Shown here piece by piece: positions 473 through 5,682 of a stretch of DNA of 64,000 nucleotides. Below the pieces are notes generated by a model. The model had not been told where the DNA came from and ran no database searches. It saw nothing but the letters and a program-made list of their open reading frames with translations. The stretch is taken from positions 13,082,001 through 13,146,000 of the forward strand of contig NC_047073.1 of the NCBI RefSeq assembly GCF_902459465.1, in the 5' to 3' direction. Position 1 is the stretch's first letter. Each line of letters opens with the position of its first letter. The translations under genes were made by a program, and so were the position numbers. Source of the stretch: Asterias rubens. Lineage: Eukaryota.

Positions 473-3237
473 TTACGCAACTCCAGATCGCACAGAGTAT
501 GTGACGAACCAGTAGCCACTGCGCTTGCGCAGCGTATTACGTAATGTTACTCCTGTAAGAATTCGAGGTGTACTGAGGGGGGAAAGAGTCTCCACGAGTT
601 GTTTTCAATTTAGTAAAATAATCAAAATCAAGCTGCACGTACGCATCGACTGAATAGCTCTGATCTCAGTGTTGTTAAACTTTAGAAAGCAGAACCTGCA
701 CTAGTTTTCATTGGATATTAATTAAGTTTTTGGAGCGAAGACGTTTTTGAGGATTTGCCTTGGGATGAAAGGTGTTAATTAAAATTTGTATTGTGGATGG
801 ACTAAATCCGCCTGCAACCAGAGAGCATCTTTCAACAAGAGACCAACTGTTTTCCAGTTGAATATATTCTTCTGAAAGGACTTTTCGGATTTTGTGTAAG
901 GTACACATCTTAATCAGATTTTTTATATGTTTTCTCTAATAAAATTTTGTTACGACTGATGTCTTTCTTCCTTTCAAGTTTCTTTTTCGTTAACTGTTTT
1001 ATGTGTGTGTGTTTGTGGTATTGTTCTCGATTCAATTTGTTCAGTAAATCAGTGCAATCTTTGGTAACTATGTGTATTATATTAATTGAAATAAGATTTT
1101 ATGCTAACTTTTAGGACGATCGCTTATTATAAGATTTAGAAGTGAGATGGTTTGAAGTGATATTATAAAAGTGCAGGTGTTCAAATGCGATATAACTTGC
1201 GGAAAGTAGGAATTTCAATCAGAGCATTTTAATCGAAGTTTTTTATACGTAACTTTCTAACTTGCTTAAGTTTGATTTGATTGTCGAACTCTTATTGAAA
1301 ACTGTTCTGGACAAACTGCCCGAATTGGAGCAAACCTAGGTTCTATGATTAAAGACAATGGACACTATTGGTAATTGTCACAGACCAGTCTTCTCACTTC
1401 GTGTATCTCAACATATGCATAAAATAACAAACCTGTGAAAATTCGGAGTTGCGAGATAACTATGAAAGAAAAACACCCTTGTAACACGAAGTTGTGTGCT
1501 TACAGATGCTTTATTTCGAGACCTCAAAATCTAAACTTGAGGTCTCAAAATCAAATTCGTAGAAAATTACTTTCTCGAAAACTACGTTACTTCAGAGGGA
1601 GCCGTTTCTCACAATGTTTCATACTACCAACCTCTCCCCATTACTCTTTACCAAGTATTAAGGTTTTATGCTAATAATTATTTTGAGTAATGACCAATAG
1701 TGTCCACTGCCTTTAAATCATAGTCTTGTCAAATTTTCTCAAACTTTGACTGGCCCCACCAATTATGTCTAGCGTATTTCCTTCCTTAACTAAAATACTA
1801 TTATTTTGTTTGTTATGTAATTTATTTTCCGCTCCCGCTTTTCCAAGTTTCGGGTTACTGTTTGTTCGACATATTTATTCAAGTGGGTATGCAACGATGA
1901 ATGTATTTATTCGTCATTTTGTCATTTCTTGCTTCCCTAACTTCATAGACTTGAGAAGCCCACGATATCGTATTCATGATCAAATTATGCGTGTTTCTCC
2001 AAGGCGATCTGGAACCGGATCTTGGACGTTAACCCACCGCTGCCTCGATACATTGTTGGGAAGTTATGCTGTGTGTTTGCTTAGGCCGTAACATGACGTA
2101 ACGGCCCAACCAGAAACCTTTATGCCTTTAATGACAATAGAATGTTTTCTGTTAACGCTGAGTAGCGTTCGTCAGTTTGATTTTAATCTACCCTCTCTAT
2201 TGATTGAGTTTGATTGTTAGCCTGTTATTAGCAACTTGCGTAACTCTTCTTTGGGGTGTAACTTTTTGAAAGTGCAGTACGGGTCGGGCTTTTATGTAAT
2301 CCGAGATAAGTGCACCATTTCGGAATACGATTTGTTGTTAACTTTAAAAATGTTGGTCTAATTAGTAATTCGAGTTATATTAAGCAACTTTCATGTGGTG
2401 AAAATAAATCCATAAAAACTCGATTTTTTTTAACATTCTCGATACGACAAACAAAATGCGAATGTTCTGTGGCCAAAAGGCTGCGAACCGTTGTTAACAT
2501 AATCTGTTTTTGTTTCGCAACTATTCATCTTGGCAGAGGGTTTGTTTAAAAAAAAAAATTGTAAATAATTAAAGGCCTACAAGAGGATTGGGATGTTGTC
2601 AATACATATAGTAATTAAATTCCCCACAGTTCTTGAAGCTCTAAGATTATCATCAGTGCTGCTGCGACTGCGACCCATGCTAGTTGCTACCCCAAAAGCA
2701 AAGCCCGGTAACGGTGACATCTCGGTTCATTCATAAGAAATTATTGATCATCTCTTCTTACGTAACTTCACCTAAGCTTGCCTGATTCACGTGACACAGC
2801 AACTATTTCGTGTCAGAGGAATTCAAATTCTTTCTATGCCCGAGGGGTCATGCACGACTAGCACATACCTATGGTTTTTGTGGTATTATGTCCACCAGTG
2901 ACGTCATTCTATATATGAATAATTCATGAACGGGAAGCATTACGTAATGGAACTTGTAAACGGCTTACAGCTACAGATAAGGTTAATTTCATTGGAGCTA
3001 TGTTGATTTTAACGGTCGAGCTTGTACTATGGTGCTACACAACTTGCCACGTATAGTATTATTTGTATCTTGGTAAATGTTCCAACGAGTTTGCTGCCAT
3101 CTATCGTCTGAAAAGTAATTTTTAAACTTTCGCTTGGTTCCTCAACGCCATAGGCTAGGCCTAGACCTTTTCTGATGCAATTGCACAGCCTTGGTTAACG
3201 CCAACCGAGGTTGGCAAACTATGGAAAGCCACACGTG
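473..3237. promoter_or_regulatory. Cluster of PAR/E4BP4 D-box sites plus a CRE and E-boxes upstream of the NFIL3-like gene
   Basis: TTACGTAA at 537, 2758 and 2940. TTATGTAA at 1813 and 2292. ATGACGTAAC at 2093. TTACGCAA at 473 and TTGCGTAA at 2236. CRE TGACGTCA at 2899. CACGTG at 2788 and 3232. Confidence 0.6.
1349..1716. mobile_element. TTAA-flanked MITE, family A (Kolobok/T2-like)
   Basis: TTAA|AGACAATGGACACTATTGGT ... ACCAATAGTGTCCACTGCCT|TTAA, with a ~360-bp body and several copies in the window. Confidence 0.85.
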
Positions 3238-3873: not shown

Positions 3874-5682
3874 ATGTTGCGAAACGGGAGCACTGTCCTC
3901 TTGAGTGTTATTCAGGTAGTTGGCTTCCAAAGTAAACAAAAATATGACAAACTTTTAAATATTTTTATTTATTTATTGTTTCTGCTACAGAATTCCATAC
4001 GAGAGATCACAATGGCAGCAACAGCATCTCCACTTCCCCAGACATCAGCTTTGAATCTTTCCATCAAGATGACGGACCAGGTGAACAACAGGGACTACCT
4101 CGCACAGCACCGACACTGCGGCAAGCCTGTGCAGCGTGTCCACCCGAACGGTCGCCTGTCCGAACAGGGGAGTCTTCCACCCATGGAGCTATCAACCAAG
4201 CTCCCCAACGGCGCGGACCCAATGGATCTGAGCACGAACATACCAGACCTGATCATGTCCCGTAAGCAGAGAGTGTTCACCTCGGAAGACTCTAAGGATA
4301 TCCAGTATTGGGACAAACGCCGCAAGAACAACGATGCCGCCAAGAGATCGAGAGAGAAGCGGCGCCTGACGGACCTCGTTCTGGAAACTCACGTGATGAA
4401 CCTCGCTAGGGAGAACGAGAAGCTCAAAGCAGAGCTGCAGGCCATGAAAGGCAAACCTTGCAAGAACAAAAACACCAAAAGTCAAAACAGGATCCATCCA
4501 ACATCAAGTGGCAAACAATTAGGCCATGGAATTGCTTACCCCGTTTATGAGCAAGATTTATCATTCTTCCAAGCACCACCAACCACCAAAATGTACCCAG
4601 CCGAACAACCCAAGAACTTGCTACCACCATATCCAACTTCGTTGCAACCTACAGTACGTCCATTCACGGATAGACTAGCTACTGAAATTCCTCACAGGGC
4701 ACCAGTTTCTTTGCCGCCAAGCATGGATGTCAACGCAGTCCATGCCTACCTCGGGAATTCACATCAACTGATGATCAAGCAAGAAACCCCGATAGATCAA
4801 CCACTGGTAGCTCGGCAACCTTATGTTGGTTTCTATAACGGCAAGACCAAAGTGACCTCGCCATCAGAGGGTCAATCTTTCTCCCCATCGTTGCTCCCTT
4901 CGGTTCCCCCGACTATACAAACTAACCCGATAGACGCCCAACAGAAACCCCCCTCCCCACCCTCTCCACACAGTGCCTTCTCATCAGGCATTGAACTCTC
5001 CAAACTTCCTCATAAACTTCGCGATAAACTAAAGCGTTCTCTTGCACAGACCGAAGAGGGCGCTGTCGTCAAGACACCATCAACATCCGAAGAGCCATTG
5101 TGCAAGATAAAGAGAACAGTGTCCTCTGAAATGTCTAGTATTCCTATCCCACAAACATCAAAGGTCGCTCATGAAGAACTTCAATGTGGTCGCCCTAGGT
5201 TGGACAGCTTTACACCCCCTCCTTCAAGCTCTTCAAGCGATGGCAACATAAGCCCCCATACATGTAGCTCCGTCTTGGAGTACCCAGTCAAATCAGAATT
5301 CATCCCTTCTGGTTCCTCATCTGAACTTACCCTGAACGAAACCCACGAGAGGATGGTTGAGGCAGCCCAGGCCTTAGCAGCCCTCAACAAAGGTACCACA
5401 GAGGGTTTCCCCATGCATGGTAGCGTACGCAATCTTCAAATGAGCATGGATGACAGTGCGAAATACTGGGACAAGCGAAGACGCAATAACCAAGCTGCCA
5501 AGAAATGCCGAGATGCAAAGAGACTCTTGATCGATTACAGAGCAGCTCGTTCGGCTTACTTGGAGCAGGAGAACATCCAGCTACATCATGAAACGTCTTC
5601 GCTGCAGAAGGATGTGGCGAGATTGAAGGAACTTGTCAGGAGAAAAACGGCAGAAGCAAACAAGAAGTTATCTCAACAGTAA
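3874..5682 (+). CDS. NFIL3: NFIL3/E4BP4/vrille-like bZIP transcription factor with two bZIP domains; join(3874..3915,3991..5682) = 577 aa, or ATG 4012 = 556 aa
   Basis: bZIP1 reads [59 protein letters not shown] (NFIL3-type). KLPHKLRDK matches the E4BP4/vrille LPHKLR repression motif. bZIP2 reads [20 protein letters not shown]...[23 protein letters not shown]. Donor CAG|GTAGTT at 3916; acceptor TTTCTGCTACAG at 3990. Confidence 0.9.

What the first reader, a model, noticed from the sequence alone, without database searches (positions are those of the whole stretch)
4261..5640. One polypeptide with two complete, different bZIP domains (NFIL3-type plus PAR/giant-type)
Seen: bZIP1 (~4261-4449; N-x7-R basic region NNDAAKRSR, zipper L/L/L/M) and bZIP2 (~5446-5640; [21 protein letters not shown], four heptad Leu) lie in one exon. 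They are separated by ~330 Pro/Ser-rich residues that contain the LPHKLR repression motif. Known: NFIL3/vrille normally have one bZIP. The RAAxLExEN signature is typical of PAR/giant activators, which compete with NFIL3 for D-boxes. Inference: the protein could fold into an intramolecular pseudo-heterodimer, bridge two D-boxes (DNA looping across the upstream cluster), or polymerise through two zippers. That would be a repressor/activator fusion in a single chain. This is the best candidate in the window for an undescribed system, though I cannot exclude that double-bZIP NFIL3 is already recorded in invertebrates.
Basis: partly seen in the sequence, partly recalled or inferred. Interest (0 to 1): 0.8.

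Follow-up and report, generated by a model that had tools for sequence, protein, structure and literature searches.

The report
Sea-star NFIL3/ATF-2 gene with two bZIPs
This sea-star gene really does encode one protein with two different DNA-binding leucine-zipper domains, but that layout is the old, widely conserved form of the NFIL3/Vrille/ATF-2 clock-repressor family, and vertebrates seem to keep only the zipper of the second domain.

Summary
A single-exon ORF (CDS 4012-5682, 556 aa; 98% identical to an Asterias amurensis protein) carries two Pfam bZIP_2 domains about 330 residues apart, with an LPHKLR motif between them.

It is not an undescribed system. The same N-terminal NFIL3-type plus C-terminal second-bZIP layout occurs in 153 proteins retrieved here. 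They come from echinoderms, hemichordates, amphioxus, molluscs, flatworms and nematodes, and include C. elegans ATF-2. One paper (PMC9939569) already remarks that the Asterias rubens Vrille candidate has two bZIP domains.

In a domain tree bZIP1 groups with NFIL3, while bZIP2 forms its own clade on the PAR (HLF/giant) side and has a PAR-like charge pattern in its zipper. The "repressor/activator fusion" and "intramolecular pseudo-dimer" ideas are not supported.

The most likely mechanism (inferred) is that each zipper dimerises separately. bZIP2 pairs either with itself, giving a dimer with two D-box heads, or with PAR factors.

One further point seems undescribed. The conserved C-terminal motif of single-bZIP vertebrate NFIL3 and of two arthropod homologues (a mite, a crab) aligns in register with zipper 2 (hhalign 96.9%). 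It looks like a relic of a lost second bZIP.

The scan's notes hold no earlier record of this on other DNA.

The parts
4012..5682 (+). Single-exon coding sequence (556 aa plus TAA stop) of the Asterias NFIL3/Vrille/ATF-2 orthologue
   Evidence: ORF. 98% identity over 100% of the length to the A. amurensis protein P0001. The A. amurensis gene call has the same length. dN/dS is 0.17 over the whole CDS.
3874..4011 (+). In-frame upstream extension of the ORF (46 codons), probably not translated
   Evidence: The orthologue's annotated start corresponds to 4012. The extension has no counterpart in any homologue aligned.
4261..4461 (+). bZIP1 (aa 84-150), NFIL3-type: extended basic region, then a 4-heptad zipper (d = L,L,L,M) ending in G-K-P
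   Evidence: Pfam bZIP_2. PDB NFIL3 chain 8k86, E 1.9e-16. All 12 NFIL3 DNA-contact residues listed in PMC10941009 are identical. Falls in the NFIL3 clade at 100/100. AlphaFold helix 97-147, block pLDDT 82-93.
4462..5445 (+). Ser/Pro-rich, mostly disordered linker (328 aa)
   Evidence: S 13.4%, P 12.8%. pLDDT below 50 over most of it. dN/dS 0.23.
5005..5022 (+). LPHKLR motif (aa 332-337), followed by a short predicted helix at aa 334-344
   Evidence: P333, K335, L336 and R337 are invariant and L332 nearly so in a 16-protein alignment that includes vertebrate and arthropod NFIL3/Vrille-like proteins. Predicted helix 334-344, pLDDT about 80.
5317..5400 (+). Helix just before bZIP2 (aa 436-463), found only in Ambulacraria and predicted to fold back on the bZIP2 helix
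   Evidence: AlphaFold helix, pLDDT about 94. Structural matches to helical hairpins cover model residues 433-556 only. Conserved in sea stars, a crinoid, urchins and hemichordates, absent in amphioxus and molluscs.
5446..5679 (+). bZIP2 (aa 479-556), PAR-like: basic region with Cys ([KR]CR), Arg at the first zipper d position, then four Leu heptads
   Evidence: Second Pfam stretch. Profile search. Monophyletic clade 99/96 on the PAR side of the tree. 6 of 7 NFIL3 base-contact residues identical, with S90 replaced by C. AlphaFold helix 481-555, pLDDT 92-97. 0 non-synonymous against 3 synonymous changes versus A. amurensis.
537..2947 (.). Context: five D-box consensus sites (TTAYGTAA) at 537, 1813, 2292, 2758 and 2940, upstream of the gene
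   Evidence: Five unique sites in about 2.9 kb, where 0.19 are expected from the rest of the window (Poisson P about 2e-6). This is the subject of another note (s1-151318).

Best explanation
The locus is the sea-star orthologue of the NFIL3 (E4BP4) / Vrille / C. elegans ATF-2 family of D-box-binding bZIP regulators, in the two-bZIP form found across bilaterians. Shown: an N-terminal NFIL3-type bZIP, a central LPHKLR motif, and a C-terminal second bZIP. The second bZIP is PAR-like in sequence and zipper charge pattern but forms its own orthologous group. Both domains have been inherited together in deuterostomes, spiralians and nematodes. Inferred mechanism: both basic regions can bind TTAC-type (D-box) half-sites, and the two zippers do not pair with each other. 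Each forms its own parallel dimer. bZIP1 pairs with bZIP1, as in vertebrate NFIL3. bZIP2 pairs with bZIP2, giving a dimer with two DNA-binding heads on a flexible tether of about 330 residues that can occupy two D-boxes at once. Because its e/g pattern is that of PAR factors, bZIP2 may instead pair with PAR-type bZIPs. The conserved Cys in basic region 2 lies at the position where Fos and Jun have a redox-sensitive Cys, so the second head may be redox-gated (inference from established knowledge of Fos/Jun). In vertebrates and in the two arthropod homologues examined the basic region of bZIP2 is gone and only its zipper remains, as the conserved C-terminal motif.
For: Identity and architecture: Pfam finds two bZIP stretches, and PDB NFIL3 matches bZIP1 at E 1.9e-16. 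Orthologues with two stretches occur in Patiria, Acanthaster, urchins, Saccoglossus, Ptychodera and amphioxus. A bZIP2 profile search of 1.84 billion representatives shows that about 95 of the best 150 clusters have an N-terminal NFIL3-type plus a C-terminal bZIP2-type domain. Named members come from a crinoid, amphioxus, five molluscs, nematodes and flatworms. C. elegans ATF-2 has two bZIP_2 stretches. Tree of 83 domains: NFIL3-type versus PAR plus z2 is split at 100/100, z2 is monophyletic at 99/96, and both domain subtrees follow taxonomy. DNA-binding competence: z1 keeps all NFIL3 contact residues; z2 keeps R, N, N, A, A and R, with C in place of S90. Among 153 double-bZIP proteins, Cys at that position occurs in 138, the invariant Asn in 150 and the invariant Arg in 150. 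Dimerisation logic: z2:z2 has 4-8 attractive and 0 repulsive g-e' pairs in 25 of 25 taxa; z1:z1 has 0 repulsive in 24 of 25; z1:z2 has at least one repulsive pair in 16 of 25. The z2 g/e pattern (R-E-E-E/D; x-E-R/H-x-K/R) equals that of the PAR set. Constraint: 0 non-synonymous changes in either bZIP against 9 in the linker. Structure: both bZIPs are predicted as long helices (block pLDDT 82-93 for z1, 92-97 for z2) with no z1-z2 packing detectable. Relic zipper: the C-terminal motif of 100 single-bZIP NFIL3/Vrille-like proteins against z2 gives hhalign probability 96.9%, E 1.4e-10, over 29 columns in heptad register. Against PAR it gives 88.9%, and against z1 45%. The islands bZIP1 - LPHKLR - zipper 2 are collinear.
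Against: No binding or dimerisation was measured; the pairing rules are simple charge counts. The invariant Arg at the first d position of zipper 2 would face itself in a homodimer, which may favour heterodimers. AlphaFold monomer models cannot show intermolecular pairing. I could not read the coordinates, so the absence of z1-z2 packing is inferred only from which residues the structural matches cover. The PAR labels for the single-domain proteins rest on sequence signature and only two source names (HLF, giant-like). The tree is unrooted and has 62 columns, so whether z2 came from a PAR gene or from an old internal duplication is open (PAR monophyly not rejected, p-AU 0.215). Short coiled-coil similarity, as used for the relic claim, can arise by convergence. 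Non-bilaterians were not surveyed, so 'ancestral to Bilateria' rests on presence in all three bilaterian superclades.
Confidence: 0.7

Rival explanations
1. PAR trap. The main job of bZIP2 is to heterodimerise with PAR-type activators (HLF/TEF/DBP/PDP1/CES-2 orthologues). The NFIL3-type repressor would then be tethered directly to its antagonists, or would sequester them, rather than only competing with them for D-boxes. This overlaps with the best explanation and differs from it only in the preferred partner.
For: The e/g pattern of zipper 2 is the PAR pattern, and both have Asn at the same a position. z2 lies on the PAR side of the tree. Arg at the first d position (130 of 153 proteins) should disfavour the symmetric homodimer more than a pairing with the Ile/Leu of PAR zippers. 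A review table lists 'protein heterodimerization activity' for C. elegans ATF-2, which acts together with the PAR-type CES-2 on lin-48. Vertebrate NFIL3 keeps the zipper but not the basic region, which would make sense for a protein-binding module. Another note of this scan reports a PAR/giant-type bZIP gene elsewhere in this genome (s1-178678; unchecked).
Against: If only the zipper mattered, basic region 2 should not have stayed intact (Asn, Ala-Ala, Cys-Arg) over hundreds of millions of years in most phyla. No same-species PAR partner was examined, and there are no interaction data.
Confidence: 0.3
2. Intramolecular pseudo-heterodimer. bZIP1 and bZIP2 of one chain zip together and bind a single D-box as a single-chain dimer.
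For: Both zippers have Asn at the same a position, and the linker is long enough for a parallel arrangement. Both basic regions are D-box-compatible.
Against: z1:z2 pairings carry repulsive g-e' pairs in 16 of 25 taxa, whereas homotypic pairings carry essentially none. The zippers differ in length (4 against 5 heptads). AlphaFold models of the Asterias protein and of C. elegans ATF-2 give no sign of z1-z2 packing. In vertebrates bZIP1 works as a homodimer without bZIP2 (PMC10941009).
Confidence: 0.08
3. Artefact or decay. The two domains belong to two neighbouring genes read through by chance, or bZIP2 is a dying remnant in this lineage.
For: Some database models do fuse tandem paralogues. The lamprey model P0006 has two near-identical NFIL3-type bZIPs, and the pseudoscorpion 'HLF' P0169 has two identical PAR-type bZIPs. 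Basic region 2 really is decaying in amphioxus and in P0013/P0015.
Against: The ORF is one uninterrupted stretch of 1.67 kb with no stop or frameshift. The same layout occurs in 153 proteins. There is transcript evidence. bZIP2 is the best-conserved part of the protein among echinoderms.
Confidence: 0.02

Closest known systems
C. elegans ATF-2 (K08F8.2, UniProt Q21361) and its nematode orthologues
   Same: Same two-domain layout: an N-terminal NFIL3-type bZIP and a C-terminal bZIP2 with [KR]CR, Arg at the first d position and Asn at the a position. Both domains fall in the same clades as the Asterias domains. Treated in the literature as the Vrille/NFIL3 homologue (PMC4232591, PMC12521169).
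   Different: Shorter (401 aa). No LPHKLR match was noted in it and it lacks the helix before bZIP2. The fork of basic region 2 reads RANRRAVFEYR, where Asterias has [11 protein letters not shown]. The papers I could read describe it as having 'a bZIP domain' and do not discuss the second one.
Vertebrate NFIL3/E4BP4 (and its NFIL3-like paralogues) and arthropod NFIL3/Vrille homologues
   Same: bZIP1 with all DNA-contact residues, the extended SRKxREF..KKDxxYW N-terminal flank, the LPHKLR motif, and a C-terminal ENxxLRxELxxLSxEVAxLKxL motif, all in the same order. Bind D-boxes and compete with PAR factors (PMC10941009).
   Different: They have no second basic region. Only heptads 2-5 of zipper 2 remain. 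The Pfam vertebrate-specific family PF06529 is not matched by the Asterias protein. The arthropod sample was one mite and one crab; Drosophila Vrille itself was not examined.
PAR bZIP factors (HLF, DBP, TEF; Drosophila PDP1 and Giant; C. elegans CES-2)
   Same: bZIP2 shares the fork and zipper signature (RDA[KR]R..., R-[AS]-x-[YF]-LE-x-EN), the g = R-E-E-E and e = x-E-R-x-K/R pattern and the 5-heptad length. It sits on their side of the main tree split.
   Different: bZIP2 forms its own clade (99/96). It has Cys rather than Ser in the basic region and Arg rather than Ile/Leu at the first d position. No Pro/acid-rich PAR domain precedes it, and it always sits at the C-terminus of an NFIL3-type protein.
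Fos/Jun basic-region cysteine (redox control of AP-1 DNA binding)
   Same: Cys at the same basic-region position (KCR). FosB and c-Fos are among the best PDB sequence matches to bZIP2.
   Different: The other specificity residues are of the NFIL3/PAR type (N-N-x-A-A), not the AP-1 type. Redox control here is only an inference from my own knowledge of Fos/Jun.

Membership tests
NFIL3/E4BP4/Vrille/ATF-2 family | NFIL3-type basic region with the residues that contact TTACGTAA (R80, N83, N84, A86, A87, S90, R91, plus the phosphate contacts Y76, R89, K93, R94, R95 of human NFIL3) | tested here: met
   The alignment to PDB 8k86 shows all 12 identical in bZIP1. The residue list comes from PMC10941009.
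NFIL3/E4BP4/Vrille/ATF-2 family | bZIP1 groups with NFIL3/Vrille domains in a phylogeny, apart from PAR domains | tested here: met
   Clade of 37 domains (27 z1 plus 10 single NFIL3), support 100/100.
NFIL3/E4BP4/Vrille/ATF-2 family | Conserved LPHKLR motif between the bZIP and the C-terminus | tested here: met
   P333, K335, L336 and R337 are invariant across 16 proteins from echinoderms to vertebrates and a mite. That this motif lies inside the mapped human repression domain (aa 299-363, PMC4629104) is plausible by position but was not tested.
NFIL3/E4BP4/Vrille/ATF-2 family | Conserved C-terminal amphipathic motif ENxxLRxELxxLSxEVAxLKxL | tested here: met
   It is heptads 2-5 of zipper 2. 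E520, L524, L531 and L538 are invariant. hhalign 96.9%.
NFIL3/E4BP4/Vrille/ATF-2 family | Pfam PF06529 (vertebrate IL-3-regulated TF region) | tested here: not met
   No hit at E up to 1. The model is vertebrate-specific, so this does not argue against orthology.
NFIL3/E4BP4/Vrille/ATF-2 family | Binds D-box DNA and represses transcription | not testable with these tools
   Inferred only from the conserved contact residues.
Two-bZIP (ATF-2-type) subgroup | Two Pfam bZIP stretches in one chain: NFIL3-type first, bZIP2-type ([KR]CR, Arg at d1) at the C-terminus | tested here: met
   (153 proteins share the layout).
PAR bZIP family (for bZIP2) | Domain falls with PAR-type bZIPs in a tree and shares their zipper e/g pattern | tested here: met
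   PAR plus z2 on one side of a 100/100 split. g = R-E-E-D, e = A-E-H-Q-K against PAR R-E-E-E, A-E-R-K-R.
PAR bZIP family (for bZIP2) | Proline- and acid-rich (PAR) region directly before the basic region | tested here: not met
   The 43 residues before bZIP2 contain one Pro and form a predicted helix plus loop.
PAR bZIP family (for bZIP2) | Ser in the basic region (RSR) and a hydrophobic residue at the first zipper d position | tested here: not met
   Cys (138 of 153) and Arg (130 of 153) in bZIP2. The PAR set has Ser, and at d1 Ile/Leu/Val/Thr.
PAR bZIP family (for bZIP2) | Nested inside PAR diversity (descent from a PAR gene) | tested here: inconclusive
   The ML tree nests z2 among PAR rows with weak support (94/71). 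A tree with PAR held together is not rejected (p-AU 0.215).

The most novel reading that the evidence does not exclude
The bilaterian ancestor's NFIL3/Vrille protein carried two DNA-binding domains: its own, plus a PAR-like one. Vertebrate NFIL3 and arthropod homologues such as Vrille still carry the zipper of the lost second domain as their conserved C-terminal motif. That relic zipper would then be an unrecognised dimerisation module, for self-association or for binding PAR factors, in a much-studied clock and immune regulator. In the papers I could search it is not described. The NFIL3 review lists only the bZIP (aa 73-146) and the repression domain (aa 299-363).
Probability: 0.5. Interest if true: 0.6.

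Novelty: already known. Interest (0 to 1): 0.4.

Why it matters
The gene itself is ordinary: it is the sea-star member of a known family, and its double domain has already been remarked on in print. The unexplained part is the interesting one. A second, intact, PAR-like bZIP has been kept on NFIL3/ATF-2 proteins in echinoderms, hemichordates, molluscs, flatworms and nematodes, and none of the papers I could reach says what it does. If the two heads bind two D-boxes, or if zipper 2 captures PAR activators, the accepted picture of NFIL3/Vrille as a simple competitor of PAR factors at D-boxes is incomplete for most animal phyla. If the C-terminal motif of vertebrate NFIL3 is the relic of zipper 2, this also gives a concrete, testable hypothesis for an unassigned conserved region of a medically studied protein. 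C. elegans atf-2 offers an immediate genetic system for testing the role of each domain.

Tried and rejected
- A homologue search restricted to the bZIP2 region returned only six echinoderm proteins because of the word index. The exhaustive profile search was needed instead.
- My first regular expressions for basic regions were faulty (searches missed domains). I replaced them with HMMs built from the hits.
- Papers that might describe the ATF-2 domains or measured bZIP interaction networks (Erdelyi 2011, Reinke 2013) are not held, and Wang 2006 was not looked up. I therefore cannot exclude that the second bZIP of ATF-2 is discussed there.
- Text searches for 'double/tandem/second/two bZIP domain(s)' found only PMC9939569 as relevant.
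- ENA contigs carrying P0015 and P0018 have no organism label. The taxa showing intermediate decay of basic region 2 remain unknown.
- Model coordinates are not exposed, so contacts had to be inferred from the residue ranges of structural matches. For the ATF-2 model Foldseek found nothing.
- No outgroup bZIPs (such as C/EBP or ATF4) were available as files, so the domain tree is unrooted, and the AU test on PAR monophyly was inconclusive.
- dN/dS between the two Asterias species rests on very few substitutions and is only consistent with constraint, not proof of it.
- Rejected readings: gene-model fusion, recent tandem duplication of one domain (the two domains lie on opposite sides of the deepest split in the tree), and a repressor/activator fusion.
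Full report
**What is there**

The window holds one uninterrupted ORF at 3874-5682 on the + strand. The stretch 4012-5679 translates to 556 residues. It is 98% identical over its full length to an annotated 556-aa protein of Asterias amurensis, so the window comes from an Asterias sea star. The A. amurensis gene is likewise a single gene call of the same length.

Pfam finds bZIP_2 at 95.6 bits (cut-off 22.3) with two separate stretches, and bZIP_1 also gives two. bZIP1 spans aa 84-150 (nt 4261-4461) and bZIP2 spans aa 479-556 (nt 5446-5679). The 328-residue linker is 13.4% Ser and 12.8% Pro and contains LPHKLR at aa 332-337.

**Is it real and expressed as one protein?**

The literature search found a transcriptome study (PMC9939569). 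[quoted passage not shown]

Between the window and A. amurensis there are 0 non-synonymous changes in bZIP1 (1 synonymous) and 0 in bZIP2 (3 synonymous). The linker has 9 non-synonymous against 12 synonymous changes, and dN/dS over the whole CDS is 0.17. The counts are few, but they agree with constraint.

**How widespread is the layout?**

Full-length homologues with two bZIP stretches occur in Patiria, Acanthaster, several sea urchins, Saccoglossus, Ptychodera and amphioxus.

I searched 1.84 billion representative proteins with a profile of bZIP2 alone. This gave 3056 hits. About 95 of the best 150 clusters have two stretches: an N-terminal one scoring as NFIL3-type and a C-terminal one scoring as bZIP2-type.

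Source names place these clusters in the following groups:
- a crinoid and amphioxus;
- molluscs: Biomphalaria, Plakobranchus, Liolophura, Babylonia, Batillaria;
- flatworms: Schistosoma, Paragonimus, Dicrocoelium, Heterobilharzia;
- nematodes: Diploscapter, Syphacia, Panagrellus, Toxocara, Haemonchus, Steinernema, Caenorhabditis angaria.

A follow-up search showed that C. elegans ATF-2 (401 aa) belongs to this group, and Pfam gives it two bZIP_2 stretches. The protein atlas likewise points to mollusc, nematode and rotifer clusters as the nearest look-alikes.

**What kind of domain is each?**

bZIP1 matches the crystallised human NFIL3 bZIP at E 1.9e-16. It keeps all twelve residues that contact TTACGTAA in that structure (PMC10941009).

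bZIP2 keeps six of the seven base-contacting residues. The seventh, Ser90, is Cys.

I built a maximum-likelihood tree of 83 domains over 62 columns. Its results:
- NFIL3-type domains (the first domains of double proteins plus single vertebrate and arthropod NFIL3 homologues) separate from everything else at 100/100 on a long branch.
- bZIP2 domains form one clade (99/96) that attaches among single-domain PAR-type proteins. These PAR labels rest on sequence signature and on two source names, HLF and giant-like.
- Within both the bZIP1 and bZIP2 subtrees the echinoderm, hemichordate, nematode and mollusc-plus-flatworm groups recur, so the two domains have been inherited together.

The tree is unrooted, and a tree with PAR held together is not rejected (p-AU 0.215). 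Whether bZIP2 descends from a PAR gene or from an older internal duplication therefore stays open.

bZIP2 has its own hallmarks: Cys in the basic region (138 of 153 proteins), Arg at the first zipper d position (130 of 153), and Asn at the a position of the second heptad (149 of 153). No Pro/acid-rich PAR region precedes it.

**How it most likely works (inference)**

I assigned heptads and counted g-e' charge pairs in 25 taxa:

| Pairing | Attractive pairs | Repulsive pairs |
|---|---|---|
| z2:z2 | 4-8 | none in 25 of 25 taxa |
| z1:z1 | 2-8 | none in 24 of 25 taxa |
| z1:z2 | 2-5 | at least one in 16 of 25 taxa |

Zipper 1 has four heptads and zipper 2 has five. The g/e pattern of zipper 2 is the same as in the PAR set.

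AlphaFold models add a second line of evidence. In the Asterias protein (40-sequence alignment) both bZIPs are predicted as long helices: block pLDDT 82-93 for z1 and 92-97 for z2. Structural matches cover only residues 433-556, which is a hairpin formed by a helix at aa 436-463 and the bZIP2 helix. No match spans both bZIPs. The C. elegans ATF-2 model shows two isolated helices, pTM 0.25, and no structural match at all.

Together this speaks against an intramolecular bZIP1-bZIP2 pseudo-dimer. It favours two independent dimerising modules:
- bZIP1 pairs with bZIP1, as in vertebrate NFIL3. PMC10941009 says NFIL3 has been reported to act only as a homodimer.
- bZIP2 pairs either with itself, giving a dimer with two D-box heads on a flexible tether, or with PAR factors.

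The Arg at d1 and the PAR-like charges make the PAR-partner variant a serious rival. The intact basic region 2 argues that DNA binding by the second head matters. None of this was measured.

**An extra result**

My bZIP2 HMM also hit the extreme C-terminus of nearly every single-bZIP vertebrate NFIL3 paralogue, and of a mite and a crab homologue, but only over the zipper part.

A full-length alignment shows three collinear conserved islands in all these proteins: bZIP1, LPHKLR, and ENxxLRxELxxLSxEVAxLKxL.

I then ran a profile-profile comparison of that C-terminal motif from 100 single-bZIP proteins:

| Compared with | hhalign probability | E-value | Columns aligned |
|---|---|---|---|
| bZIP2 | 96.9% | 1.4e-10 | 29, in register with heptads 2-5 |
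| PAR set | 88.9% | 2.4e-6 | 24 |
| bZIP1 | 45% | 2e-4 | 12 |

Amphioxus and two unlabelled proteins (P0013, P0015) show an intermediate state, with a decayed basic region 2 but an intact zipper 2.

The simplest reading is that the two-bZIP form is ancestral for bilaterians. Vertebrates, and the arthropods sampled here, would then have lost the second basic region but kept its zipper. The NFIL3 review I could read lists only the bZIP and the repression domain. I found no paper describing this relic, but several relevant papers are not held.

**Context**

Five D-box consensus sites lie in the 2.9 kb upstream of the gene, where 0.19 are expected from the rest of the window. Another note reports a PAR/giant-type bZIP gene elsewhere in this genome (s1-178678; unchecked), which would be a candidate partner or competitor.

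**Verdict**

The thing itself is the sea-star member of a known, broadly conserved two-bZIP family that includes C. elegans ATF-2, and the double domain of the Asterias protein is already mentioned in print. It is not a new system and not a repressor/activator fusion. What remains open, and moderately interesting, is the function of the conserved second bZIP and the apparent relic of its zipper in vertebrate NFIL3.

Noticed in passing
window 537-2947: Five D-box consensus sites (TTAYGTAA; three of them the palindrome TTACGTAA) cluster upstream of the gene, where 0.19 are expected from the rest of the window (P about 2e-6). Only four more occur in the other 61 kb.
   Followed up: partly
window 5317-5400 (aa 436-463): A helix just before bZIP2 ([16 protein letters not shown]), predicted at pLDDT about 94 and apparently folded back on the basic region and first heptads of bZIP2. 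It is conserved only in Ambulacraria (sea stars, crinoid, urchins, hemichordates). It could be an autoinhibitory lid or an AlphaFold monomer artefact.
   Followed up: partly
window 4729-4779 (aa 240-256): A further predicted helix inside the otherwise disordered linker (pLDDT about 78). Its function and conservation were not examined.
   Followed up: no
proteins P0014, P0016, P0017, P0121 (amphioxus) and P0013, P0015 (ENA, organism unknown): Basic region 2 is degenerate (RRRNSEKARRSR in amphioxus; RRRYNEQAMQYN in P0015) while zipper 2 stays intact. This looks like an intermediate step towards the vertebrate state.
   Followed up: partly
protein P0006 (Lampetra planeri, 674 aa) and P0169 (pseudoscorpion 'HLF', 396 aa): Two other 'double bZIP' database proteins are of a different kind. 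Each carries two near-identical copies of the same domain type (two NFIL3-type, or two PAR-type). They are most likely tandem paralogues merged in a gene model, or recent duplications.
   Followed up: no
spiralian orthologues in alignment A3 (e.g. P0133, P0135, P0141): Molluscan members share a short LAQSxPLPL motif before bZIP2 and a DPKY[LV]ERRRRNN start of basic region 2. The ambulacrarian helix is absent at that place.
   Followed up: no
window 3874-4011: The ORF extends 46 codons upstream of the conserved start codon. The extension has no counterpart in any homologue and is probably 5' UTR.
   Followed up: partly
PMC5667737 (Daphnia Vrille): The authors report that Vrille lacking its bZIP domain still raised Dsx1 expression, though less than the full-length protein. 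A residual activity independent of bZIP1 would fit a functional relic zipper 2, but this is only a lead.
   Followed up: no
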